Below are positions 227 to 20,500 of a stretch of 38,517 bases of DNA, in pieces. Position 1 is the stretch's first letter, and every line of letters begins with the position of its first letter. The notes under the pieces were generated by a model that saw only the letters and a program-made list of their open reading frames with translations, was not told the DNA's origin and made no database searches. The position numbers were made by a program, and so were the translations under genes. The stretch comes from Octopus bimaculoides. Its lineage: Eukaryota. Location: positions 12,241,846 through 12,280,362 of the forward strand of contig NC_069000.1 in assembly GCF_001194135.2 (NCBI RefSeq). Reading direction: 5' to 3'.

Positions 227-1035
227 CAATACTATGTACCGAGTCATATTATACGAAGTGGCAGAAAGACAAACACACTCATAAACTCTTCAACGCCGAC
301 CACAGTCATTGATCGCATCTTCATTGCAAATTGGTGAGAAGACGCCATCTTGTTGATGCAAAGCGCCACCGTCGTTTTGTTTACGTATTATTATTTTCGA
401 ATAGCATATTTCCATTTATTTATACATTTATTTATTTAATTTGGTTGTTTTTTTTTTGTTTGTTTGTTTGGTTGGTTTAGGGGTTGTGTGTTGTGTTGTG
501 CTGTGTTGTGTTGTGTTTTTTTATTTCTTGTGTTTTATTTATTGTTTTGCTATGAATTATATTGTGTATATTATATATTAAATATTTATCACATACTAAT
601 TATATGTGTATATATNNNNNNNNNNNNNNNNNNNNNNNNNNNNNNNNNNNNNNNNNNNNNNNNNNNNNNNNNNNNNNNNNNNNNNNNNNNNNNNNNNNNN
701 NNNNNNNNNNNNNNNNNNNNNNNNNNNNNNNNNNNNNNNNNNNNNNNNNNNNNNNNNNNNNNNNNNNNNNNNNNNNNNNNNNNNNNNNNNNNNNNNNNNN
801 NNNNNNNNNNNNNNNNNNNNNNNNNNNNNNNNNNNNNNNNNNNNNNNNNNNNNNNNNNNNNNNNNNNNNNNNNNNNNNNNNNNNNNNNNNNNNNNNNNNN
901 NNNNNNNNNNNNNNNNNNNNNNNNNNNNNNNNNNNNNNNNNNNNNNNNNNNNNNNATGGATATATATATATATATATATGTATGTATATATATATACATG
1001 CGTATAAGTAAATATATATACGCTCATAAACGCTC

Positions 1036-1091
<56 letters not shown>

Positions 1092-1214
1092 TGTGTGTGC
1101 ACATACGCAGGCACACGCATATATACATACATGTATATAAGTATGTGGGCATGTTTGTATGCGTGTGTTTGTATATGTGCATGTTAGTGTTTTTATTATT
1201 TCATCAGGTTAAAT

Positions 1215-1430
1215 GGGTAAGCTGACAGAATCGCCATTGCGCCAGAAAAGTGCTCTGCGGCACTTTTTATGGCTCTTTATGTTCTGAGTTCCAATTCTGT
1301 TGAGGTCGACTTTACCTTTCATGTTTTGGAGGTCGATAAAATAAGTACCACTTAAGTACTGGGGTTCATATATATATCAACTTATCCTCTTCTCTAAATT
1401 TGTTGACATGGTGCCAAAACTAGAAACCAT
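1215..1430 (+). mobile_element. tRNA-derived SINE, family A, diverged near-full-length copy
   Basis: Colinear with 4515-4726: A-box-like AGCTGACAGAATCG, B-box-like GTTCTGAGTTCCAATTC, GAGGTCGACTTTACCTTTCAT, GTCGATAAAATAAGTACC, tail ...GTGCCAAAACTAGAAACCATT. Confidence 0.8.
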
Positions 1431-1598
1431 TTTTTTTAATGAGATCTAGAAGTTTCGGGCGAAGGACCTTACAGAGGGATTCCTTTCGAGTAAACAAATG
1501 CTTCTGATAAAATGGACCCTTACATCAAGGACAAGAAGACAAATCAAATTCGGCTAAATAATCCTAAAGCTGTAAACTTGGATTAACTCGCTTTAATC

Positions 1599-1736
1599 CT
1601 GTGTGGTAAGTAGCTTGCTTACCAACCACATTGTTCCGTGTTCAGTCCGACTGCGTGGCACCTTGGCCAAGTATCTTCTACTATAACCTCGGGCCGACCA
1701 AAGCCTTGTGAGTGGATTTGGTAGACGGAAAGTGAT
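1599..1736 (+). mobile_element. SINE family B (CORE-like), 5' half
   Basis: GTGTGGTAAGTAGCTTGCTTACCAACCAC...GTTCAGTCCGACTGCGTGGCACCTTGGCCAAG...GCCGACCAAAGCCTTGTGAGTGGATTTGGTAGACGGAAA matches the reverse complement of 13495-13627 and 31470-31596. The CCTTGG(G/C)CAAG segment resembles the CORE-SINE core (recalled, not aligned). Confidence 0.85.
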
Positions 1737-2173
1737 AGTAGGGCTTCATTCGCTCGTTTTCTTTCTTTCACTGACTATTTCTCATTCTGATACCCCCTGT
1801 GCTTTATTTTGATAAATGACTAACGTTTGAAACGTTAAGGTGCTTCCTTTTCCCATTAAAACATTAAGTTAATACCGTATTTGCTAAACCTCTTACATAC
1901 TGCGCTGTAGTTTTCTTATAGTTCATTGTATTGACACTGAACACACACACACACACACATGAACTAATAGACACATACACACACACATAGACACGCATAT
2001 ATATATATCTATGATTTGGTCATATTCTTGTCATTATATATAATCTCACTGACACTTATATATGTATGAGTGCGTAAGTCTGTTAATGTAGTTACAGAAA
2101 CCTCACGCAAATACAAACATCAATCTCTCCCCACTCAGTGTGTGTGTTTGTACACGCATACATACGTATACAC

Positions 2174-2214
<41 letters not shown>

Positions 2215-3240
2215 TATATGCGCATGTCAGAATATACAGATACGCATATATGTATGTGTATGCACCAGTGCCTTTATATATGTAGCTATATTTTTCTCTG
2301 TGTATGTACTGGTGTTTTCGCTTGTGAGCGCTCAATGTGTGCGTGTGTATTTTCGAGAGTGTAGATGGGTTTGTGTGTATGTCTGACAGGAAAACTGGAT
2401 ATCATTTACCTACATATGCTGCTTACATTTCTGTAAGATCTATGTTCCCTATTGTTAATTGGCCGGAAAAAATATATTTGTGGATATTTCTACATCTTAT
2501 GTATAAACTTTTAAGAGGTTTCTCATCTTACAACAATATCTTTTTTATCCGTTGTCCATCACATCTGGGTTTTTTTTTGTGTTTTTTTTTTTTCGTGTGT
2601 AGAGGCACGTCATGTCAGTTTACAACGGTATGTATATGAGTATATGGGTATGAAATCTCACACATGCGCACAAAATATCAGATACGTAAGGATGTTTTCA
2701 CTCGTATATACATACTCCCACATATACACACAAACACATGGACCCAAATATGTGTGAACATATTGTATACACACACGTGTAGATATGAGTTTGTATGTAT
2801 GTATGTATCCCCGCGAAAATACAGATTCATACACGCACACATATATTTGTACATAACTACGTGTATACATATATATATATATATATATATATATGTATAC
2901 ATATATATGTATGTATATAAATATATATATATAAATGTATATATATATATATATGTATNNNNNNNNNNNNNNNNNNNNNNNNNNNNNNNNNNNNNNNNNN
3001 NNNNNNNNNNNNNNNNNNNNNNNNNNNNNNNNNNNNNNNNNNNNNNNNNNNNNNNNNNNNNNNNNNNNNNNNNNNNNNNNNNNNNNNNNNNNNNNNNNNN
3101 NNNNNNNNNNNNNNNNNNNNNNNNNNNNNNNNNNNNNNNNNNNNNNNNNNNNNNNNNNNNNNNNNNNNNNNNNNNNNNNNNNNNNNNNNNNNNNNNNNNN
3201 NNNNNNNNNNNATATATACATATATATACGTTATGTACGC

Positions 3241-3309
<69 letters not shown>

Positions 3310-4514
3310 TAGGTATGTATGTATATATACAGATGTACATTAGTGCCATCACCCCCGACCCGCACCGGTGTCGCCGCGCCTTTTTCACTGTTGAACACTT
3401 CCCCCGTGACTATAATTGCTATAGTTTCGTCGTCCCTCACTCCACTACAACCACCTTTATCATCTTACCCGACAGCTGCTGCTACAGCTGTACGTTCCCC
3501 CACAACAGTTATTAAAAATCATCGTCGCAATCTTTATCATCTATATCTATATCAACTATCGCTCGACTTCTCTTCGAAATAGCACTGAATGTTTCCGCAA
3601 CCAACATCCTGCCATCTTAAAACATTAAAAATGAAATCCATTGCGTAATGTAGCGCTAGGTATGTATGAAATTACGGATAGTAACGGCTGGAATTCTTTT
3701 ATTCATAAGCCTCTTTGTTCAGAGCTGATCTACAGCTATACAACAACAACAACAACATTATCACTTGCACAGCTATATTCATTTCAAAGGTTTCGGTTAA
3801 TTGATAGTAAGAGCTAGAATACGACCTTTAGTGGCCATTTTTAAAGGTGTCCATGGCTGGTTGGAGGAATGCATCCTCAAATGGGACATTTGGCTAGAAT
3901 GGCTGGAACAGAGTAAACCCCTCTAATAGCATGCAAGGTCTAGACTAGCATCTTAAACTGGTTGATAGATTAAGTGTGTCACCCACGTCTGTAGCATCAA
4001 TGACATCCTAGAACGAGAGCAGCAATCTAATGTGAATCTTAATTTAGAGTTGGTGACCCTATATATAATCATCTTAGCTAAATCTGCATTCCAAATCTGC
4101 ATTATTTTTCAAGGCGAGAAAATACTTTAGTTCGTTCAGTTCTTAACCGTAGCAAAGTTATACATGTATGGTCATCAAGAAGGTTTATGAGACACTGTGA
4201 GTCATTTTTAGGGATTTTAAAACCAAGCAGCACTTTTTATCCTTACACAAAGCCCTCCATTTCACGTTGATCCATCTTAAACCTAGTACTGGCGCAGCCT
4301 TCTCTCTCTGCGGTAGATTATCCTTAATCTTCTGCTGGTCAACGGGTGGAAAGGGCCGAAGGGGTATTTATATCTGTTCACTACTACATTGGCATCTAGA
4401 ACAAATAGCGAAAGCATGATACACGCTATCAAGTTTTGGATGCTTACTAGTAACAGCTATGGATTTTTCCATCACTGGAGTGGAAGAGAATTTCATTATT
4501 ATTTGTGTCTTTGT

Positions 4515-4726
4515 AAAGCGGCGAGCTGGGAGAATCGTTAGTACACCGGACGAAATGCTTAGCGGTATTTCGTCTGCCGCTACGTTCTGAGTTCAAATTC
4601 CACCGAGGTCGACTTCGCCCTTCATCCTCTCAGGGTCGTTAAATTAAATACCATTTACGCACTAGGGTCAATGTAATCGACTATTCCCTTCCCCCAAATT
4701 TCAGGCCTTGTGCCTATAGTAGAAAA
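4515..4726 (+). mobile_element. tRNA-derived SINE, family A, full length with 18-bp target-site duplication
   Basis: Head GCGGCGAGCTGGGAGAATCGTTAG, B-box GAGTTCAAATTCC, body GAGGTCGACTTCGCCCTTCATCC, tail TTTCAGGCCTTGTGCCTATAGTAGAAA. Flanked by identical TATTATTTGTGTCTTTGT at 4497-4514 and 4727-4744. Confidence 0.9.
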
Positions 4727-5474: not shown

Positions 5475-5627
5475 GGTGCATGGTTCAGAGGTTAGAGTGT
5501 CGGACTCACAATCATGGGGTAGTAGGCTTCCAAAGAATAAGTCATGGGGTCGATTTGCTCGACTAAAGGCGGTGCTCCAGCATGGCCACAGTCAAAAGAC
5601 TGAAACAAGTAAAAGAGTAAAAGAGTA
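5475..5627 (+). mobile_element. Chimeric or internally deleted SINE: type C tRNA-like head joined to family B 3' tail
   Basis: GGTGCATGGTTCAGAGGTTAGAGTGTCGGACTCACAATCATGGGGTAG runs directly into TAGGCTTCCAAAGAATAAGTC...GGCGGTGCTCCAGCATGGCCACAGTCAAAAGACTGAAACAAGTAAAAGAGTAAAAGAG. Confidence 0.8.
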
Positions 5628-6440
5628 TAGAAATTGAATGCGGTACGTCTGCAATAACTTTATATGTTACACATGTAACTCCTCTAACCGAATTGTTGCA
5701 TGCTAACTATAAAATGTTGCGTATATTTTTACTGTACATGAGGTTACACAAAGGTATCATACATTCCTTATCACACTTACAAAGCCTGTCATTACAATGT
5801 TGATTTTGGCATTCTCCGACATAGCGACATAGCTGACATTTCGTGGATCAATGAAGATACTTTTCCAAACAAGAAACGTGGTAGTTACTCACTTACTACG
5901 TATCTTAAAACTGTATTATTAAGTGTCTACCTACGGAGACGAAAGAAATGTATAACAAACATATAAATATTTTGATAGGGTCATATATGTATTTATAATA
6001 TGTCTGTATGTTTATGTTGTGTGTGTGAATGTGCGTGCATTATTCAGCCAGTTGTATTTATAAGAGAGTATGTATGTGATATTCATAAACATCTTCTATA
6101 CGGAAATGTATATGTTCATATAACCTTGATAACAGTATGTAAACAAAATGAAGGAAATAATTCATATTAAGGAAGAAATTAAAGAATAAAAAGAGCAGAT
6201 GAATCGGCTTAAAAATGGTGGAGGAAATGAGAAAAAAATGAAAGGCGAGGAAGGAAAAATAACGAATAATGTATAACAAAAGAATAGGAGGTAGGTAATA
6301 TTAAGAATAAAGCAAACAAACAAAAAGAAATACGAGGAAAGAATCAATAAATAAAAGGAACAACGAAACGATTAATATCGGGTTAACTTTGCGATATATA
6401 TATATATATGTGTATATAATTTTAGAATAAAAAACCCACA

Positions 6441-7082: not shown

Positions 7083-7586
7083 ACGAAACATTACCTATGT
7101 AACGCGACACTTCATTACATCACCTGATGAGATGTTTCTGCACCATGGGATGCACCGAAATTCATTGTATAGTTTCCCACCCGCGAGGGAGCATTGCAGG
7201 ATGTGTCGAAACGATCGTTGTAGTGTTTACATATATATATATATACATATGCTTCAACTTAAGTACCTAATTCAACTAAATCNNNNNNNNNNNNNNNNNN
7301 NNNNNNNNNNNNNNNNNNNNNNNNNNNNNNNNNNNNNNNNNNNNNNNNNNNNNNNNNNNNNNNNNNNNNNNNNNNNNNNNNNNATATATATATGTATGTA
7401 TACATGCATATATATATACATGCATATATGTATGCATGTATATATGTACATGCATGCATATATATATATGTATGCATGCATGTATGTATGTATATATACA
7501 TTGTATATGTATATACATATGTATATTTATACATATATATGTATGCTAATACATATGTATGCATATGTGTGTTTGTATGTATATAC

Positions 7587-9524: not shown

Positions 9525-9663
9525 GTCTTTTATATCCCAGTTATATTTGGATAGGAACGTGGCAATATTATGTCTTTTATATCCCAGTTATATTTGGATA
9601 GGAACGTGGCAATATTATGTCTTTTATATTCCAGTTATATTTAGATAGGAACGTGGCAATATT
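9525..9663. repeat. Minisatellite, 47-bp unit, about 3 copies
   Basis: TCTTTTATATCCCAGTTATATTTGGATAGGAACGTGGCAATATTATG starts at 9526, 9573 and 9620. The third copy has 2 substitutions and is truncated. Confidence 0.95.
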
Positions 9664-10650: not shown

Positions 10651-12311
10651 GTGTATAAAGGAAACCAAATCAGAATGCATGTCATAGATGCAGTTACTGA
10701 AAAATCTGTTTTTTTGTTTTGAAATTGTGTCCTTGGGAGAATATTTATTGATATCGCGTAATTTTTCTTATTAGACTTTTTGTAAGAGCAATGACCACAA
10801 AGTTAACAAAATATAAAACTGCAAACACGGCTCTATTTTATGAAATTCACTTTATAACAACGTGGTGCAACTCTACCGTATGGCATCCCGGTAAAGTCCT
10901 TTATATTATCATCCAATTTCGTTCCAAACTTTGGGCGTGAAATCTGGTTGACGAAAATTATACAGACGTACGTTAGGTGAACTGAAATCATGGATAGTCT
11001 ACTGAACATGTCGGCCGTTTCTATAAAATCATCTCTATAGTATGGCCAAGAAATCATAGGGCTCCACCATATGTCAGATTTGACATGATGATTTAAACCT
11101 GCTCCCTCTGTGCGCTATATATATATATGTATATATATANNNNNNNNNNNNNNNNNNNNNNNNNNNNNNNNNNNNNNNNNNNNNNNNNNNNNNNNNNNNN
11201 NNNNNNNNNNNNNNNNNNNNNNNNNNNNNNNNNNNNNNNNNNNNNNNNNNNNNNNNNNNNNNNNNNNNNNNNNNNNNNNNNNNNNNNNNNNNNNNNNNNN
11301 NNNNNNNNNNNNNNNNNNNNNNNNNNNNNNNNNNNNNNNNNNNNNNNNNNNNNNNNNNNNNNNNNNNNNNNNNNNNNNNNNNNNNNNNNNNNNNNNNNNN
11401 NNNNNNNNNNNNNNNNNNNNNNNNNNNNNNNNNNNNNNNNNNNNNNNNNNNNNNNNNNNNNNNNNNNNNNNNNNNNNNNNNNNNNNNNNNNNNNNNNNNN
11501 NNNNNNNNNNNNNNNNNNNNNNNNNNNNNNNNNNNNNNNNNNNNNNNNNNNNNNNNNNNNNNNNNNNNNNNNNNNNNNNNNNNNNNNNNNNNNNNNNNNN
11601 NNNNNNNNNNNNNNNNNNNNNNNNNNNNNNNNNNNNNNNNNNNNNNNNNNNNNNNNNNNNNNNNNNNNNNNNNNNNNNNNNNNNNNNNNNNNNNNNNNNN
11701 NNNNNNNNNNNNNNNNNNNNNNNNNNNNNNNNNNNNNNNNNNNNNNNNNNNNNNNNNNNNNNNNNNNNNNNNNNNNNTATATATATATATATATATGCAT
11801 GTGAGTGCGTGCGTGTGCATGAATGTGGGTGTGAGTGTGTTTGTGGATGCGTGTGCATTCAAATATGTGTGTATGTGTATATATATGTATGTATAATTAT
11901 GTGTATATGCTCATAATCCGCAAAAACTTATACGCACACAGATGAGCATAGTTGCACATGTTCGTCACTTTCAGACATATATACATAAACACATACATAC
12001 ATACATACACACCTATCTATGTCTCTACACAGACAAACGCGTGTGCTAACAAAACGCATACATATGTGCTCACATCACGTACGCACGCACACACGAACAT
12101 ACATGTATGCAGTACACACACACACATACACACACATACTCACAATCACGCAAGCACACACACACACACACACGCGTAACCAAAAACATTGCCTGCATAT
12201 ACTCCCACACAAACATATGTATGTTTAGGCAATATTTACTCCCCCACACATACATCCCCATACACATCCACATATATGCTCGTACACAGATGTACACTCT
12301 CTTACATACAC

Positions 12312-13130: not shown

Positions 13131-13348
13131 TACTCTTTACTCTTTTACTCTTTTACTTGTTTCAGTCATTTGACTGCGGCCATGCAGGAGCACCGCCTTT
13201 AGTGGAGCAAATCGACCCCAGGACTTATTCTTTGTAAGCCTAGTACTTATTCTATTGGCCTCTTTTGCCGAACCGCTAAGTTACGGGGACGTAAACACAC
13301 CAGCATCGGTTGTCAAGCGATGTTGGAGGGACAAACACAGACACACAA

Positions 13349-13390
<42 letters not shown>

Positions 13391-13627
13391 NNNNNNNNNN
13401 NNNNNNNNNNNNNNNNNNNNNNNNNNNNNNNNNNNNNNNNNNNNNNNNNNNTATATATACATATGTATATGTATATATGTGTATGTGTGAGTACTTGAGC
13501 TTCTTTCAGTTTCCGTCTACCAAATCCACTCACAAGGCTTTGGTCGGCCCGAGGCTATAATAGAAGACACTTGCCCAAGGTCTCACGCAGTGGGACCGAA
13601 CCCGGAACCATGTGGTTGGTAAACAAT
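13131..13627 (-). mobile_element. SINE family B (CORE-like), near full length, with central CA/TA microsatellite and assembly gap
   Basis: On +: tail (TACTCTTT)n-TACTTGTTTCAGTCATTTGACTGCGGCCATGC...GGACAAACAC, microsatellite with gap 13391-13451, then GCTTCTTTCAGTTTCCGTCTACCAAATCC...CTTGCCCAAGG...CCCGGAACCATGTGGTTGGTAA. Confidence 0.92.
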
Positions 13628-13723
13628 GTCGACCTCAACGGAATTTGAACACAGAACGTAGCGGCAGACGAAATACCGCTAAGCATTTCACCCGGCTGCT
13701 AACGTTTCTGCCAGCTCGGCGCC
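13628..13723 (-). mobile_element. SINE family A head, abutting the family B copy
   Basis: Minus strand GGCGCCGAGCTGGCAGAAACGTTAGCAGCCGGGTGAAATGCTTAGCGGTATTTCGTCTGCCGCTACGTTCTGTGTTCAAATTCCGTTGAGGTCGAC. Confidence 0.9.
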
Positions 13724-14607
13724 CTCGAACTTACAAATTAAAATTACACGACGACTGGGCATGGGAGGCCAACATTTCTTGGCTCAGCAGCAATGAGAAC
13801 AGTATAAATGACACATTAGGAGACTTCGTTTCTTCAAATGAGAGTTCGAACTCATGCATAGCAGACTTCATCACCTCTTAATCTGAGAACTGTATAGCCT
13901 AGGGGTTAACACACCATAGTTTAAAGGAAAGCAACTGTACAAATATATTAGTCAAGTGGCCAATTAAAATGTTCAGAAAAATCCGATTTAACTTCTTTCC
14001 CAGTACAGCGTATTGAGTAATCCCTGCTCTATGCAGAGATGAAGGTTAATATTTATAAAATATGTCAGTAGACCTACTCCTGTAATGCACCACTCTGCGT
14101 ATTTTGAGCGCAGACGTTATCGTATACATATGCAGGGTCCGATATTTGTTCCACATCTGTGCAATAAGCGATTCTGCATATGTCTACCACACGCATTAAA
14201 AATCTACATGCATCTGTACGCAAGAACTTTTGTATACGCGTCTAGAATTTCCCTTTGCTGAATATTCGGGGACATACACACAGCTATCTAAAGATTTTAG
14301 TTGAAAGATTGGGGCAGGCTGCTTGTAATGTGTTAAGATTTCCCAATTCTCAAGTAACCCAACAGCATATTTAGGTATGTTAAAGTACTTTGTAGTATAA
14401 ACGAGATAAGCCTAAAGCAAACAGCTGCTAAAATGTGTAAGTGTTCGCCTGTCGATTCGCTTAAGGTTTTCAGTGGGAAAAAAAAGAGAAAGAAAAAGAA
14501 AAAAAGTTTTGGTAACCGCGGAAGCAGCAGTATTCCAAATATCAAGTCTCTCCAGAGACATGGAATAGAGTTTCACATACTTTCATATTGCAAGACAAGG
14601 AAGCACG

Positions 14608-14610
<3 letters not shown>

Positions 14611-14670
<60 letters not shown>
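14611..14670. repeat. (AC)n microsatellite
   Basis: Direct reading. Confidence 0.95.
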
Positions 14671-14675
<5 letters not shown>

Positions 14676-14733
14676 AACACACATACATAAATACAAAGAC
14701 AGTCAAATATACTGAAGCACAGACTCAAGTACT

Positions 14734-14811
<78 letters not shown>

Positions 14812-15214
14812 AAAATGGATGCACAAACATAACTACTGACACACACACATACACACATGGACACACATACACGCACACATACACATTTATGTATGTACAT
14901 GAACACACACAACGGTAAAGACACGCACACACACACACACACATATGTAAAAACAGAGGCATTCATGTAGATTATACGCAAAAACACAACAGAGGGTAGA
15001 TAATGAAATGACGCTTGCATACATAATCATGAATTCACATCACTCACTTTGACTTACAAACATTCAAACATAACCAGAATGAATCATATAAACATGTGTA
15101 AATCTATCTATCTATCTATGTGTGTGTGCACATACATACATACACACATATATATATATATAATAATTTAATGATCGTTATGTATGTGTTTTTTCGTGTT
15201 TTGTTCCGATGGTA

Positions 15215-15300
15215 ACCACTCCTGAAGAAGTGCCAAATGTCAAAATCCAATGGACCAGTCACTGGATAAGTTTGGCACAGAAATGTTAACATAGAGTGGT
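15215..15300 (+). ncRNA. Putative type I hammerhead ribozyme, minimal Penelope-like type with palindromic stem III
   Basis: Stem I ACCACTC (15215-21) / GAGTGGT (15294-300); core CTGAAGA (15222-28); stem II GTGCCAAA (15230-37) / TTTGGCAC (15271-78); GAAA (15280-83); stem III palindrome ATGTTAACAT (15283-92); H17 = A15293; AATAAA at 15302-07. A-A opposition at 15229/15279 is non-canonical. Paired by hand; activity untested. Confidence 0.72.
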
Positions 15301-15369
15301 GAATAAATCGATATATCGAGTTTGAAGTCTCTGTCTCTTTTGAATATGAAAATTTAAAAGTTAAAAACC

Positions 15370-15407
<38 letters not shown>

Positions 15408-15644
15408 AACGAATGCGTATGTGCCATTTGTGTGGGTGTGTATTCAATTATCGGTGCATATCAATCTGAAATTACCAAAGAAATATTTAGAACTGCTTGT
15501 ACATGATTCTCTCACTCGCTTTCTCTCTCCCTATCTCTTTTTCTCTCTCTCACTGTATCGATCTATATATCTAGTGGCTAATATAACGCATTTCATTGTC
15601 ATAACTTTTCCCCTAATAGTATGCCCACCTCTCAATTTTTAAAA

Positions 15645-15852
15645 TATTCCTTTCTACTATAGGAACAAGGACGAACATTTGGGGGCTGGGACTAGTCGAT
15701 CAGATCGACGCCAGTGTTCAACTCGTGCTTAATTCATTAACCCCAAGAAAATTAAAGATAAAGTCAACTTTGGCAGAATTTGAACTCAGAACGTAAGAAA
15801 TACCACGAAGCATTTTGCCCAGCGAGTTGTCGATTCTGCCAGCTCTTCGCCA
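15645..15852 (-). mobile_element. SINE family A, diverged copy
   Basis: On +: TTTCTACTATAGGAACAAGG (tail), GTCGATCAGATCGAC, AAAGTCAACTTTGGCAGAATTTGAACTCAGAACGT, AAGCATTTTGCCC, GATTCTGCCAGCTCTTCGCC (head). Confidence 0.85.
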
Positions 15853-16067
15853 TCTATAATTTAAAAAAAAATAATGCTAATAGTGTCTCCTAATAAAATC
15901 GCATAGCTGGATACTATCCATCCGAGGTTTGTTATGATATTCAAGCATTTCTTCTTTATGCTTATTATATAAGAAAAAAACCTTTTTGATATTTACATGA
16001 AGTCAGCAAAGAGAAACTCGGAGTAACGGTTTCAAATGACTTCAGTTTCAAATAAGTCATGTGTATA

Positions 16068-16260
16068 TATTATTCTTTTCTACTCTATGAATAAGGCCCG
16101 AAATTTTGGGGGAGGAAGACAGTCGATTGGACCGACCCCAGTATGCAACTGGTGCTTAATTTATCAACCCCGAAAGGATGAAAGACAAAGTCAACCTCAG
16201 CGGAATTTGAACTCAGAGCCTAAAAACAGACGAAATACCACTAAGCATTTCGCCTAACGT
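16068..16260 (-). mobile_element. SINE family A, 5'-truncated second unit of a head-to-tail pair
   Basis: On +: TTCTTTTCTACTCTATGAATAAGGCCCGAAATTT ... CCCCGAAAGGATGAAAGACAAAGTCAACCTCAGCGGAATTTGAACTC ... AAGCATTTCGCCTAACGT. Confidence 0.88.
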
Positions 16261-16495
16261 TTCTTACTTGTTTATTGCCCACAAGGGGCTAAACATAGGG
16301 GGGACGAACAAGGACAGACAAAGGGATTACGTCGACTACATCGACCCCAGTGCGTAACTGGTACTTAATTTATCGACCTCGAAAGCATGAAAGGCAAAGT
16401 CAACCTCGGCGGAATTTGAACTCAGAACGTAACAGCAGGCTAAATACCACTAAGCATTTCGCCCTGCGTGCTAACGATTCTGCCAACTCGCCGCC
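16261..16495 (-). mobile_element. SINE family A, full length, long-tail variant
   Basis: Complete head (minus GGCGGCGAGTTGGCAGAATCGTTAGCACGC), B-box GAGTTCAAATTCC, GTCGA-N5-TCGAC hairpin, and alternative tail ...GTCCTTGTTCGTCCCCCCTATGTTTAGCCCCTTGTGGGCAATAAAC. Confidence 0.92.
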
Positions 16496-16527
16496 TTAAG
16501 TAATCTTTTCTACTCTAGGCACAAGGC

Positions 16528-16643
<116 letters not shown>

Positions 16644-16855
16644 ACGTAAATAGTGTAATTTTATGAAGAAATGCAAAATTTTACATATTGAAATGTAAAT
16701 ACTTTCCACAATTCAGACCGCTTAAAACACTGAGTTTAGCAACTTCCTGGTACATGATAAGAACTATATGGAAAGGATTCTGAAATATAAAGCACTACGG
16801 ATACGGATTTCGGTACTACTTCGATAATGGTCTACAAAATGACAGGTATGAGGAG

Positions 16856-17043
16856 ACGCCATCATTTACCCTCCTTTCCAGCCTAGCCTCTTTATCTGTG
16901 TCAGGAGTGAATGCTGCGTGGGTAAATGATGCCGTGTATCAATATTGAATGATTGCCCGGACTTTAATAATGTATCAGAGACAGGATTCGATCTTTCGAA
17001 TCCTCGGTCGCTAACTTGACACCTTACCGACTCGGCCAAGCTG
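16856..17043 (-). mobile_element. Possible old tRNA-derived SINE of a fourth family
   Basis: Minus strand TGGCCGAGTCGGTAAGG (A-box-like) and AGATCGAATCC (B-box-like), followed by a body with a 16-bp inverted repeat. Single copy in window; no valid cloverleaf. Confidence 0.4.
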
Positions 17044-17297
17044 CAATTCTGGTAAAAATGTTACTCAAGAAAGTCTCCCTAACCGCTCACCCTCCTCTAT
17101 CGACAAGATTTGCCTCACCACATTCTAACCCTAACCCCCCCCACTTTTTTTTTTTTTTTATCTACAATCCTATCCGAATGTCTGATATAACAGATATGTA
17201 TATTGAGCTGGTATTTATATTTCCCTCTTTTCTACTGTTTAACGTACTATTATTGTTATTAGTATATCACCATCGCCATCATCATCATCATCGTCGT

Positions 17298-17338
<41 letters not shown>

Positions 17339-17519
17339 GAATAATCCTTATCCTCATCAACATCACTACCACAACCAACCAACCAGCCAACCAACCAAGA
17401 AAACCACCACCACACCCGCCACGACTGCCCCCCCCCCNNNNNNNNNNNNNNNNNNNNNNNNNNNNNNNNNNNNNNNNNNNNNNNNNNNNNNNNNNNNNNN
17501 NNNNNNNNNNNNNNNNNNN

Positions 17520-17561
<42 letters not shown>

Positions 17562-20500
17562 GATATTTTATATTTACATAACACATCTACCCTGGCCTAG
17601 TTTGGTTATCATTTGAACACGTATATATTCTTCGCCATGTGTGTGTTTGTGTTTGCGTTTGTATGTGTATGTGAGTATGCGCGTAAGAGAGACACACGGA
17701 CAGAGAGAGAGAGTGTGTGTGTGTGTGTGTGTGTGTGTACGATTTTGCGTGTGTTTGTGTATGGGTGTTTATGTATAAATTTATATGTTTGTGCTTATGT
17801 ATGAATCTGTGTAATGTCGTACAAAAAAACAAAAAGAAAAGCAAAAAGCAGTCAACAAGCTGGAGAGGGCACACCCACAACACACATATTCATATCATGC
17901 ATACGCAAACGTAATGAAAATCATTTATCTGCGACAAAATACTTTCATAATTTCTCACCTCTTTCTCCCTAGACACACACACACACACACAAACACATTT
18001 GCTCTCATAGGTTTATGTATCTCTCTATTTCTATCTCGCCTTCTCTCTCCCTCAATATACATACATACATACATATATACATATATATATGCTTACACTC
18101 ATACATATGTATCGTTATTAATATAGATATATGTGTGTTTATATAAACGGGTACATGTGCGTATGTGTATGGATATATATATATATTCTTTAAAGATGTT
18201 TGGATACAAACATAAATGGTTTACATTCAAGAATAACCATCGGAAGCTAATTTGTATTTGCAACGACACTTAATTTAGTAAATGTAAACACGTATTCTTC
18301 GTTTAATAGTAGATTAGTCTTCAAAAAATGTAACATTATATATATATATATATNNNNNNNNNNNNNNNNNNNNNNNNNNNNNNNNNNNNNNNNNNNNNNN
18401 NNNNNNNNNNNNNNNNNNNNNNNNNNNNNNNNNNNNNNNNNNNNNNNNNNNNNNNNNNNNNNNNNNNNNNNNNNNNNNNNNNNNNNNNNNNNNNNNNNNN
18501 NNNNNNNNNNNNNNNNNNNNNNNNNNNNNNNNNNNNNNNNNNNNNNNNNNNNNNNNNNNNNNNNNNNNNNNNNNNNNNNNNNNNNNNNNNNNNNNNNNNN
18601 NNNNNNNNNNNNNNNNNNNNNNNNNNNNNNNNNNNNNNNNNNNNNNNNNNNNNNNNNNNNNNNNNNNNNNNNNNNNNNNNNNNNNNNNNNNNNNNNNNNN
18701 NNNNNNNNNNNNNNNNNNNNNNNNNNNNNNNNNNNNNNNNNNNNNNNNNNNNNNNNNNNNNNNNNNNNNNNNNNNNNNNNNNNNNNNNNNNNNNNNNNNN
18801 NNNNNNNNNNNNNNNNNNNNNNNNNNNNNNNNNNNNNNNNNNNNNNNNNNNNNNNNNNNNNNNNNNNNNNNNNNNNNNNNNNNNNNNNNNNNNNNNNNNN
18901 NNNNNNNNNNNNNNNNNNNNNNNNNNNNNNNNNNNNNNNNNNNNNNNNNNNNNNNNNNNNNNNNNNNNNNNNNNNNNNNNNNNNNNNNNNNNNNNNNNNN
19001 NNNNNNNNNNNNNNNNNNNNNNNNNNNNNNNNNNNNNNNNNNNNNNNNNNNNNNNNNNNNNNNNNNNNNNNNNNNNNNNNNNNNNNNNNNNNNNNNNNNN
19101 NNNNNTATATATACATATATATATGAATGTATGTATATGTATACATGTATATATCCATGTATATATATTTGTGTGTGAGTGTGGCTGTGTGTGCGTGTAT
19201 GTCTGCGTGTATATCAATTATACTCACCTACATGCAAAAAGAGCAACATAATAGTCGCTGAATATTATAAGTATTCACATTACAACTTGAACTTTCGCGA
19301 ATACAGGGCTCATCAGGCAGAGTGTAGTATGTTTCATGCTGAAATATAATATAATATATAGATTTTAAAATTTGACACTCGTCAATCATCATGGCCTGAT
19401 ATTTTAAACGCTCTGTTTGGCTGACTTATTTACGTGGCCTTATTGAGAAAATTGAACTCACACACGACCCGTTCATTGCATCCACATGCTCTCTCCTGCA
19501 CGAATAGATTTGATGCAATTCAGCTTCTCTCTTGACCCAATTTGCTATTGGAATTAATCCACATCGCCACAGTCACATCACTGACTGGCAATCAGCTTTT
19601 GCTCAGAGCTATGCTTCTTCTAGTCCGGCCTCTCTTCAGAGTGGTCTCTTCGAATGTAAATAATGTAAATACGTTATTTTCTTATTTTATTAAAATTTGG
19701 CGATTTTTTAACGCTTCCTTACATAAGGAGAAATTTTAAGTGACCTTAAAATACCTGGGAACAAATAACGTTTTCATAGGTTTCGTCTTTCAACGCTATA
19801 TGAAAAATAAGCCATGAACATATACCTTCCAATCCTTTCGTCCTGTATCTTACTTTCTCACAGATTTCTGGACTTTCCAACTTGCCTACTTTCGCTATGG
19901 GGAAAAATTATTTCTGTTAAAATGCGCTTCAACCCTCCAATTCTCTGAGAAGTGTATGAGAAAAGGAGTTTATCAGTTTCTTAGGCAGAAACCAAACGAA
20001 ATCGCCAATCTCTGAAATAGAGAACATCCTCTCTTGCATCAGACAGATAAATTTCTTTTGCATTCTCTTGATATATTCGGAACAAGAAATGTTTTTAAGC
20101 AACAAGGCTGCTAACCATACACAAACTTATAACTTAGGAGGACAAAGCTCATGTTCAGCAATTTTTAATGTTTATAGAAAAGCAGTAAATGATCTTCTTT
20201 GTATCACCTGGAGAGATTCCGAAACCAATGCAAGTAGACATGTATGTTACTACGTCAATATCAAAATAGTTGCAAATGAAAACGCTTTAGTAATGAAATA
20301 GTTACAGCAAACCAAGTGTACTTACTTACAGCATGTCAGAATACAAGTATTAATAGATCTGCTTTGATTGTTTAACCAACTGGTGTTTGTACATATTCTT
20401 GAATGGAGAGCGCCTCAAGAGGGATTTTTTACTGAAAAATATATTCTTGAAGAAACTACTTAACATAAAAAATATAATAGCTTTGTGCACATGCAAGAAT

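What the first reader, a model, noticed from the sequence alone, without database searches (positions are those of the whole stretch)
15215..15300. Hammerhead ribozyme fold hidden in non-coding DNA
Seen: every hammerhead element in type I order. Stem I is 7 bp perfect (ACCACTC/GAGTGGT), then CUGAAGA, stem II 8 bp perfect (GTGCCAAA/TTTGGCAC), GAAA, stem III, and an AUA triplet predicting cleavage after 15293. Unusual points are an A-A opposition where G10.1-C11.1 is typical and a 33-nt loop II that can pair internally (ATCCA/TGGAT or CCAG/CTGG). Knowledge: CUGANGA, GAAA and NUH define the hammerhead core. Inference: a self-cleaving RNA or a recently decayed one. I cannot tell whether this family is already catalogued.
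Basis: partly seen in the sequence, partly recalled or inferred. Interest (0 to 1): 0.85.

Follow-up and report, generated by a model that had tools for sequence, protein, structure and literature searches.

The report
Lone hammerhead-ribozyme motif between TA microsatellites
The 86-base stretch really does contain a complete type I hammerhead (self-cutting RNA) motif, most likely a stray and probably weakened copy of the kind carried by animal retroelements, so it is a believable but fairly ordinary find that still lacks relatives or a cleavage test.

Summary
The thermodynamic fold is exactly the hammerhead three-way junction, and it persists with up to 150 nt of flank on each side. A descriptor scan finds no comparable motif elsewhere in the window. 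None of 3000 composition-matched simulated windows matched it. My estimate is about 1e-5 to 1e-4 per window, which still means roughly one chance motif per Gb-sized genome.

- Helix III is a perfect 10-nt palindrome, the dimerisation hallmark of metazoan type I and Penelope-like-element (PLE) hammerheads.
- If A15229 is read as the bulged nucleotide after A9 that is typical of PLE hammerheads, G10.1-C11.1 is intact and only A15279 is extra.
- The ~210-bp unit sits between two (TA)n runs (p~0.007). PLE-type elements show an insertion bias for microsatellites.

Against the claim:
- No Rfam hammerhead model matches, even at E<=10.
- There is no second copy in the window and no RT/endonuclease remnant nearby.
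- No homologues were found, but a control shows the collections do not cover this genome.

Verdict: most likely a solo, possibly crippled retroelement-type hammerhead (~0.6). A chance look-alike is ~0.25. It would be a new member of a known kind, of modest interest.

The parts
15215..15221 (+). Helix I, 5' strand (positions 2.7-2.1), ACCACUC
   Evidence: Pairs perfectly with 15294-15300. Pair probability is 0.86-1.0 in all contexts tested.
15222..15228 (+). Core box CUGAAGA (C3 U4 G5 A6 A7 G8 A9)
   Evidence: Exact match to CUGANGA. It is one of only 15 CTGANGA sites on both strands of the window.
15229..15229 (+). Extra A: either position 10.1 opposing A15279, or the bulged nucleotide between A9 and G10.1 that is typical of PLE hammerheads
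   Evidence: Sequence. [quoted passage not shown]
15230..15278 (+). Helix II arm. It has 9 bp (15230-15238 with 15270-15278; the last pair is G.U) and is capped by a 31-nt loop. The loop folds into a small hairpin (15245-15249 with 15263-15267; 15251-15253 with 15259-15261).
   Evidence: MFE and centroid structure. Pair probabilities are 0.97-1.0.
15279..15279 (+). Unpaired A between C15278 and G12. This is the one nucleotide that departs from every described hammerhead architecture (read either as an A.A mismatch at 10.1/11.1 or as an insertion before G12).
   Evidence: Sequence. 10.1-11.1 is called the most conserved pair after 15.1-16.1, and only a U.U mismatch is reported as a natural exception (PMC3088659; PMC7229834).
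15280..15283 (+). Core box GAAA (G12 A13 A14 A15.1)
   Evidence: Sequence.
15283..15292 (+). Helix III, AUGUUAACAU. In the monomer it forms 3 bp plus a UUAA loop. It is a perfect 10-nt palindrome that can form a 10-bp intermolecular helix III in a double hammerhead.
   Evidence: Self-match in blastn. The descriptor scan flags it as a palindrome. Cofold of two copies gives -63.0 kcal/mol against 2 x -25.3, with the 10-bp intermolecular helix.
15293..15294 (+). Predicted cleavage site: A17 (15293), cut, then G1.1 (15294); triplet AUA
   Evidence: Follows from the NUH rule and the register of the core. Not tested experimentally.
15294..15300 (+). Helix I, 3' strand (1.1-1.7), GAGUGGU
15163..15375 (+). 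Unique ~210-bp unit that carries the hammerhead. It has an A-rich 3' end (15346-15362) and a 12-nt palindrome TCGATATATCGA at 15308-15319. Inferred to be a retroposed insertion.
   Evidence: No other copy in the window by blastn or by a covariance model built from the motif. It lies between the two TA runs. The insertion reading is an inference.
15149..15162 (.). Upstream (TA)7 run, at the end of a compound (ATCT)n(GT)n(ACAT)n(AT)n microsatellite
15376..15399 (.). Downstream (TA)12 core of a (TA)n run (TRF array 15371-15407)
   Evidence: Only 0.66% of comparable placements in the window have (TA)>=6 runs within 80 nt on both sides.

Best explanation
The site is a solo genomic copy of a retroelement-type, type I hammerhead ribozyme, of the kind carried by Penelope-like elements and their non-autonomous derivatives (animal retrozymes). 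It lies on a ~210-bp unit that was retroposed into a (TA)n microsatellite.

How it would work if transcribed on the + strand:
- The RNA folds into the three-helix junction.
- G12 (15280) acts as general base on the 2'-OH of A17 (15293), and the 2'-OH of G8 (15227) acts as general acid.
- The 15293/15294 bond is cut, leaving a 2',3'-cyclic phosphate and a 5'-OH.

Why it is probably a poor ribozyme as it stands:
- Helix III is only 3 bp, but it is a 10-nt palindrome. As in other animal type I hammerheads, efficient cleavage would need two copies pairing through helix III (a double hammerhead). No partner copy lies within the 38.5-kb window.
- The extra A15279 next to G12 is not seen in described hammerheads.
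- The copy is therefore most likely a weakly active or inactive relic. Deleting one nucleotide (A15279) would restore the exact PLE-type architecture.

Shown: the motif, the fold, the dimer potential, its uniqueness in the window and the TA bracketing.
Inferred: the retroelement origin, the strand transcribed, and the activity.
For: - Complete core and helices in type I order.
- The MFE fold equals the hammerhead junction, z = -3.1, and is stable in 10 to 150 nt of context.
- Chance expectation is about 1e-5 to 1e-4 per window. None of 3000 simulated windows reached the observed helix total, and the reversed and complement controls were empty.
- Helix III is a perfect 10-nt palindrome. The homodimer gains about 12 kcal/mol through a 10-bp helix III.
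- PMC4209133 lists features of metazoan PLE hammerheads: long helix II (6-8 bp), a conserved nucleotide between 9 and 10.1, conserved G10.1-C11.1, palindromic helix III/loop 3, mostly dispersed single copies with only a few inside full PLEs, and low in vitro activity. All of these fit if A15229 is read as the bulge.
- The unit is bracketed by (TA)n runs, p~0.007 for a random placement in this window. PMC8557442 reports an insertion bias toward microsatellites shared with canonical PLEs, with (TA)n commonly observed in the Naiad clade (which lacks canonical HHRs) and listed as a preferred target in its figure 1 legend.
- A mismatch at the base of helix II has a natural precedent: U.U in about 60,000 axolotl HHR_Amex2 motifs (PMC7229834) and in bacterial examples (PMC3088659).
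Against: - No Rfam hammerhead family matches at the gathering score or at E<=10 on 1.1 kb, 226 nt or 106 nt.
- The A15279 insertion, or A.A at 10.1/11.1, is not a described natural variant. Mispairs other than U.U are reported to be less active (PMC3088659).
- There is no second copy, intact or decayed, anywhere in the window, so no dimer partner and no tandem array.
- No RT or GIY-YIG remnant was found in the stop-to-stop frames around it.
- Helix I (7 bp) is longer than the 4-5 bp given for PLE min-HHRs. Loop II (31 nt) is much larger than usual.
- No homologues, so no covariation.
- The palindrome and TA-flank arguments were made after looking at the site.
Confidence: 0.6

Rival explanations
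1. Chance look-alike. An AT-rich, repeat-rich, Gb-scale genome contains of the order of one sequence that happens to satisfy a relaxed hammerhead descriptor. This is such a site, with no ribozyme ancestry or function.
For: - The motif needs a relaxation of the most conserved helix II pair (A.A) and an unusually long loop II.
- Extrapolating and my analytic estimate gives about 0.5 to a few such motifs per 2.5 Gb.
- No Rfam hit, no second copy and no homologues.
- The reverse complement folds equally well, at -27.7 kcal/mol, so fold stability alone is not strand-specific.
- Perreault et al. warn that consensus-conforming sequences arise by chance in large databases (PMC3088659).
Against: - The per-window probability is only about 1e-5 to 1e-4.
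- Chance does not predict the perfect 10-nt palindrome in helix III (about 0.07).
- Chance does not predict the TA runs on both sides (0.007).
- Chance does not predict the coincidence with the PLE-type bulge plus G10.1-C11.1.
- Real retroelement hammerheads occur at hundreds to >100,000 copies in many animal genomes (PMC4209133, PMC7229834). That far exceeds the chance density if this genome carries any.
Confidence: 0.25
2. A host-retained, active single-copy hammerhead. It would be comparable to the conserved intronic HH9/HH10 ribozymes of amniotes and would process a host transcript. The A.A would be tolerated as a non-canonical pair stacked under the A9.G12 pair.
For: - The core is intact and all helices are perfect, with no decay visible apart from A15279.
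- A monomer helix III of 3 bp plus a tetraloop is within the range given for invertebrate type I hammerheads (PMC7229834).
Against: - No gene, exon or Pfam domain was detected anywhere in the window.
- The site is embedded in microsatellites and SINE copies.
- No loop-loop or pseudoknot partner for loop II was found beyond 5-6-nt A/U-rich matches.
- Conservation cannot be assessed.
- Palindromic helix III points to the retroelement, dimer-acting type.
Confidence: 0.1
3. Some other structured element, such as a hairpin-forming spacer or a small-RNA precursor. The long helix II arm would be the functional part and the hammerhead boxes would be incidental.
For: The 49-nt helix II arm is the most stable part of the fold, with pair probabilities of about 1.0.
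Against: - The arm is too short and too interrupted for a typical miRNA precursor.
- No Rfam family matches it. The miRNA-family hits nearby are microsatellite artefacts outside the motif.
- This reading does not explain the ordered core boxes and helices I and III.
Confidence: 0.05

Closest known systems
Minimal/variant type I hammerheads of Penelope-like elements (Cervera & de la Pena 2014, PMC4209133; reviewed in PMC6765202)
   Same: - Type I topology.
- Long helix II (here 9 bp; 6-8 bp described).
- An unpaired nucleotide after A9 followed by G10.1-C11.1, if A15229 is read as the bulge.
- Palindromic helix III/loop 3, implying action as a dimer.
- No evident loop-loop tertiary contact.
- Mostly dispersed solo copies.
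- The elements show an insertion bias for microsatellites (PMC8557442).
   Different: - An extra A (15279) lies between C11.1 and G12.
- Helix I is 7 bp rather than 4-5 bp.
- Loop II is 31 nt and contains its own hairpin.
- Helix III has 3 bp plus a tetraloop rather than none or 1-2 bp.
- No pLTR, RT or GIY-YIG context was detectable.
- Family copies were not observable.
Canonical metazoan type I hammerheads of satellite or retrozyme repeats (Schistosoma Sm-alpha, newt satellite 2, cave cricket pDo500, mussel/coral/axolotl non-LTR retrozymes; PMC7229834)
   Same: - Type I.
- Weak helix III capped by a palindromic tetraloop.
- Helix I of about 6 bp.
- Dimeric (double-hammerhead) cleavage.
- Retroelement context.
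   Different: - Those have a 4-bp helix II with a small loop that contacts loop 1.
- They sit in tandem repeats of 170-400 bp and are recognised by Rfam Hammerhead_1.
- Here there is no tandem array, no Rfam hit, and a long branched helix II.
Axolotl HHR_Amex2 and bacterial hammerheads with a U10.1.U11.1 mismatch (PMC7229834; PMC3088659)
   Same: A non-Watson-Crick opposition at the base of helix II in an otherwise canonical core.
   Different: - The mismatch there is U.U, reported as the best tolerated mispair. Here it is A.A.
- Those variants are supported by many copies or by cleavage assays.
CChMVd (+) hammerhead with an extra A between A9 and G10.1 (De la Pena & Flores 2001, as cited in PMC4209133)
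   Same: An extra unpaired purine on the 5' side of helix II is compatible with activity.
   Different: - That one is a viroid, type III hammerhead.
- It has no extra nucleotide on the 3' side before G12.

Membership tests
Hammerhead ribozyme (class; Rfam RF00163, RF00008, RF02275, RF02276, RF02277) | Core boxes CUGANGA ... GAAA ... UH in the correct order around a three-way junction | tested here: met
   CUGAAGA 15222-28, GAAA 15280-83, U15292-A15293.
Hammerhead ribozyme (class; Rfam RF00163, RF00008, RF02275, RF02276, RF02277) | Three helices I, II and III with an A15.1-U16.1 pair; one helix open (type I, II or III) | tested here: met
   7, 9 and 3 bp. Type I. It is the MFE structure and is robust in context.
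Hammerhead ribozyme (class; Rfam RF00163, RF00008, RF02275, RF02276, RF02277) | A Watson-Crick pair (normally G10.1-C11.1) lying directly between A9 and G12 | tested here: not met
   A15229 opposes A15279. The G-C pair is displaced by one position on each side.
Hammerhead ribozyme (class; Rfam RF00163, RF00008, RF02275, RF02276, RF02277) | Score at or above the gathering threshold of an Rfam hammerhead covariance model | tested here: not met
   No hammerhead family is listed at the gathering score, nor at E<=10 on 1101, 226 or 106 nt.
Hammerhead ribozyme (class; Rfam RF00163, RF00008, RF02275, RF02276, RF02277) | Homologues that keep the helices through compensatory changes | not testable with these tools
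   No relatives were found. A SINE present 7 times in the window is also invisible to the same collections.
Hammerhead ribozyme (class; Rfam RF00163, RF00008, RF02275, RF02276, RF02277) | Mg2+-dependent self-cleavage 3' of H17 | not testable with these tools
   Needs in vitro transcription and cleavage mapping at 15293/15294.
Hammerhead ribozyme (class; Rfam RF00163, RF00008, RF02275, RF02276, RF02277) | Tertiary contact between helix I and loop II (or a pseudoknot) for fast cleavage | tested here: inconclusive
   Helix I has no internal loop. The only loop II-to-flank complementarity is 5-6 nt and A/U-rich.
PLE-associated (min-)hammerheads | Long helix II (6-8 bp) with an unpaired nucleotide between A9 and G10.1, and conserved G10.1-C11.1 | tested here: inconclusive
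   Met on the 5' side (A15229 bulge, G15230-C15278, 9 bp). An additional A15279 precedes G12, which the family description does not include.
PLE-associated (min-)hammerheads | Palindromic 15.2-16.2 / loop 3, allowing a dimeric active form | tested here: met
   AUGUUAACAU is a perfect palindrome. The cofold gives a 10-bp intermolecular helix III.
PLE-associated (min-)hammerheads | Location in a pLTR flanking an RT/GIY-YIG ORF, or membership of a multi-copy dispersed family derived from one | tested here: not met
   No RT/EN signal within 13.5-17 kb or elsewhere in the window, and no second copy in the window. Genome-wide copy number is not testable here.
PLE-associated (min-)hammerheads | Insertion into microsatellite targets such as (TA)n | tested here: met
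   (TA)n runs lie 53 nt upstream and 76 nt downstream. Only 0.66% of comparable placements share this. The bias is described in PMC8557442.
Non-LTR retrozymes of animals | Head-to-tail tandem repeats of about 170-400 bp, each with one type I hammerhead | tested here: not met
   TRF, blastn and the covariance-model search find a single copy only.

The most novel reading that the evidence does not exclude
The site is an active hammerhead of an uncatalogued family. In it an A.A opposition, or a symmetric 1x1 purine spacer, sits between the A9.G12 pair and the G-C base of helix II, and helix II carries a 49-nt branched arm. That would show that the most conserved helix II position of the hammerhead can be replaced in nature by something other than U.U.
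Probability: 0.1. Interest if true: 0.55.

Novelty: new member of a known kind. Interest (0 to 1): 0.32.

Why it matters
If genuine, it adds one more animal genome lineage to the very large set that carries retroelement hammerheads. It would also give a natural test case for how much the 10.1/11.1 position tolerates. That has some use for ribozyme specialists and for repeat annotation of this genome, because Rfam models miss this architecture. It does not open a new question. Type I hammerheads with palindromic helix III in Penelope-like elements and retrozymes are well described and number from thousands to >100,000 copies in several animal genomes.

Tried and rejected
1. Rfam. No hammerhead hit at any threshold. 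The mir-297, mir-1277, mir-3149 and mir-466 hits around 14757-15199 and 15367-15446 are (CA)n/(TA)n microsatellite artefacts far below gathering scores.

2. Other CTGANGA...GAAA sites (7124+, 19293-, 36444+), and a relaxed hit at 7121-7225 with a 3-bp helix I. These are at the level expected by chance (0.25 per window).

3. A second or partner copy. blastn, descriptor scans and a covariance model built from the motif with filters off find nothing. The next best matches are microsatellites at E>0.2.

4. The translated-ORF route to homologues.
- Exact look-up of the 58-aa minus-strand ORF found nothing.
- The word-index search found nothing.
- The full HMMER search of 1.84 billion representatives gave only P0001 and P0002. 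Both are translations of tandem satellites whose scores are inflated by repetition.
- Neither of their loci (L001, L002) has an Rfam hit. L001 has no CTGANGA on either strand. L002 has it on the wrong strand for homology.

5. DNA pattern scans of the metagenome, prokaryote-genome and viral collections returned 0 hits. As a control, a SINE 21-mer found only one unrelated contig, L003, and a second SINE's translation found no protein. These negatives therefore say nothing about copy number.

6. RT or endonuclease remnants. Pfam on 20 stop-to-stop frames found nothing relevant.

7. A pseudoknot between loop II and the flanks. Only short A/U-rich matches were found.

8. Organism identification. 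Sequence strings searched in the literature gave 0 papers. From memory the SINEs resemble those of octopods, but this is an untested lead.

Full report
**What the window is.** The 38,517-base window looks like a draft animal-type genome.
- It has 14 runs of N totalling 4,328 bases.
- GC is about 0.17-0.39 per 2 kb.
- TRF reports 111 tandem-repeat rows, mostly di- to tetranucleotide microsatellites.
- A ~200-bp SINE-like repeat is present seven times.
- No tRNA, no Rfam family at gathering score and no Pfam domain was found in 20 of the more complex stop-to-stop frames.
- The organism is unknown. From memory the SINEs resemble those of octopods, but a literature string search found nothing, so this stays an untested lead.

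**The observation.**
- Helix I is ACCACTC 15215-21 with GAGTGGT 15294-300.
- The core box CUGAAGA is at 15222-28, followed by A15229.
- Helix II is GTGCCAAA 15230-37 with TTTGGCAC 15271-78, plus a possible U15238-G15270 pair.
- A15279 follows, then GAAA at 15280-83.
- Helix III is A15283-U15292, U-A, G-C with loop UUAA.
- A15293 is H17, so the predicted cut is 15293/15294.
- The MFE and centroid fold of the 86 nt are exactly this junction: -25.3 kcal/mol, z = -3.1, with 0 of 200 shuffles folding as well.
- The same structure is the MFE with 10 to 150 nt of flank. Pair probabilities are >0.86 for helices I and II and about 0.6 for helix III.

**Is it more than chance?** A home-made type I descriptor allowed any 10.1/11.1, G.U pairs, a helix II arm of up to 80 nt and a helix III arm of up to 60 nt.
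- It finds this site, plus an inferior alternative register of the same core, and only two marginal 3-bp-helix-I hits elsewhere on the two strands.
- The reversed and the complement-only sequences give nothing.
- In 3000 first-order-Markov windows of the same composition, the loosest setting gives 0.25 hits per window and a (5,4,3 bp) setting gives 3e-4. The largest helix total seen was 16 bp, in 3 cases, against 19 observed.
- Multiplying base and pairing frequencies at the observed thresholds gives about 6e-6 per window (my calculation).
- The motif is therefore highly non-random for this window. The same numbers imply roughly 0.5 to a few such motifs per 2.5 Gb. A single copy in a big genome is not proof, a caveat also made by Perreault et al. 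(PMC3088659).

- Positions 15283-15292, ATGTTAACAT, form a perfect 10-nt palindrome. Two copies cofold at -63.0 kcal/mol against 2 x -25.3, forming a 10-bp intermolecular helix III, the classical double hammerhead. Short helix III with a palindromic loop is the signature of metazoan type I hammerheads and of those in Penelope-like elements (PMC4209133; PMC6765202; PMC7229834).
- Cervera and de la Pena describe PLE hammerheads as having an unusually long helix II (6-8 bp), a conserved nucleotide between A9 and 10.1, a conserved G10.1-C11.1, and palindromic 15.2-16.2/loop 3. They occur mostly as dispersed single motifs with low in vitro activity. Read that way, A15229 is the bulge and G15230-C15278 is G10.1-C11.1. 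The only anomaly is then one extra A (15279) before G12.
- The unique ~210-bp unit (15163-15375) lies between (TA)7 and (TA)n runs. Only 184 of 27,800 comparable placements (0.66%) in this very microsatellite-rich window have (TA)>=6 within 80 nt on both sides. PMC8557442 reports an insertion bias for microsatellites that the Naiad/Chlamys clades share with canonical EN+ PLEs. It names (TA)n as common for Naiads, which themselves lack canonical HHRs, and lists (TA)n as a preferred target in its figure 1 legend.
- The unit also ends in an A-rich stretch on the same strand as the ribozyme. That fits retroposition of a + strand RNA, but only as a weak inference.

**Evidence against.**
- None of the Rfam hammerhead models reports the site, at the gathering score or at E<=10 on 1101, 226 or 106 nt. 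The 31-nt loop II and the displaced G-C pair plausibly explain this. From background knowledge, PLE-type variants were themselves found outside the classical models. It is nonetheless a failed membership test.
- An A.A at 10.1/11.1, or an insertion before G12, is not among the natural variants described. The documented exception is U.U, said to be the best tolerated mispair (PMC3088659; axolotl HHR_Amex2, PMC7229834).
- There is no partner or tandem copy in the window by blastn, by descriptors, or by a covariance model built from the motif and run with filters off.
- No RT or GIY-YIG remnant is nearby.

**Homologues.** All attempts failed.
- Exact look-up of the overlapping 58-aa minus-strand ORF found nothing.
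- Word-index and full HMMER protein searches with the minus-strand translation of 15167-15370 found no true relative. The two hits, P0001 and P0002, are satellite-repeat ORFs with repetition-inflated scores. Their loci have no Rfam hit and no hammerhead box on the strand that homology would require.
- Exact-pattern scans of the metagenome, prokaryotic-genome and viral collections returned 0 hits.
- As controls, the translation of a second SINE-like repeat (several copies in the window) finds no protein. A 21-mer from the SINE that occurs seven times in the window finds just one unrelated metagenome contig.
- The collections therefore do not cover this genome. The lack of homologues carries no weight either way, and covariation could not be tested.

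**Interpretation.** I weighed three things:
- the chance density, about 1e-5 to 1e-4 per window before the palindrome and TA-flank coincidences;
- the density of real retroelement hammerheads in animal genomes that carry them, thousands to >100,000 copies (PMC4209133, PMC7229834);
- a discount for the post hoc choice of supporting features and for not knowing whether this genome carries such elements.

The resulting estimates are about 0.6 for a solo retroelement-type hammerhead, probably weakened by A15279 and lacking a dimer partner. They are about 0.25 for a chance look-alike, about 0.1 for a host-retained active ribozyme and about 0.05 for something else.

**Mechanism if active.** This is the standard hammerhead transesterification:
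- G12 (15280) acts as general base.
- The 2'-OH of G8 (15227) acts as general acid.
- In-line attack by the 2'-O of A15293 on the 15293/15294 phosphate gives a 2',3'-cyclic phosphate and a 5'-OH.
- The active fold is most likely reached only when two transcripts or tandem copies pair through the helix III palindrome.

These steps follow from established hammerhead chemistry and are not shown here.

**Novelty and score.** The kind is well known, and this would be a new, slightly aberrant member. Specialists would not be surprised by a type I hammerhead in an invertebrate-like genome. The only unusual point is the A.A or inserted A next to the core, which matters only if the RNA proves active. 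Interest is about 0.3.

Noticed in passing
window 1281-1297(-), 4584-4600(-), 13641-13657(+), 15776-15792(+), 16203-16219(+), 16412-16428(+), 23572-23588(-); full copies e.g. 15650-15870, 16080-16300, 16290-16500: A ~200-bp SINE-like repeat with the conserved core GAATTTGAACTCAGAAC occurs seven times in 38.5 kb. Three copies lie within 1.3 kb downstream of the hammerhead. Mean column identity in the alignment is 63%. ARAGORN finds no tRNA-like head.
   Followed up: partly
window ~13160-13330(+), 29090-29290(+), 5495-5659(-), 27960-28200(-), 31310-31590(+), 24731-24958(-): A second interspersed repeat is recognisable from recurring translated strings (FQSFDCGHAGAPPL......[20 protein letters not shown]). 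It is typically followed by a (CA)n or (TA)n microsatellite. Its translation finds nothing in the protein collection.
   Followed up: partly
window 15308-15319: A perfect 12-nt palindrome, TCGATATATCGA, lies 8 nt 3' of the hammerhead, inside the same ~210-bp unit. Its role is unknown.
   Followed up: no
window 7121-7225 (+): A weak hammerhead-like arrangement: CTGATGA ... GAAA ... with helix I 3 bp, helix II 5 bp and helix III 4 bp. This is at the level expected by chance for the relaxed descriptor (0.25 per window).
   Followed up: yes
window 9525-9663: A 47-bp unit is repeated three times in tandem at 97% identity (TRF score 264). It is not a microsatellite.
   Followed up: no
window 36871-37238: Two adjacent diverged direct repeats (77 nt at 75% identity, spacing 172; 58 nt at 88% identity, spacing 198). 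This suggests a local duplication of a ~170-200-bp segment. No Pfam hit in its frames.
   Followed up: partly
window 30299-30943 and 37911-38233: Long imperfect trinucleotide arrays (GAT/TGA/GAG; CAT, with a 48-nt higher-order period at 38119-38231) create long artificial ORFs rich in D/E/H.
   Followed up: no
window: 14 N runs, e.g. 616-955, 11140-11777, 18354-19105, 32485-33291: Assembly gaps make up 11% of the window, nearly all next to microsatellites. The stretch 13452-17437 that holds the motif is gap-free.
   Followed up: yes
L002 (ENA ERZ25067868 ctg64008_5x_l), locus 286-3385: An unrelated contig fetched through a spurious protein hit carries a ~273-bp tandem repeat, translated as a 587-aa ORF. 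CTGANGA recurs once per unit. No Rfam hit.
   Followed up: partly
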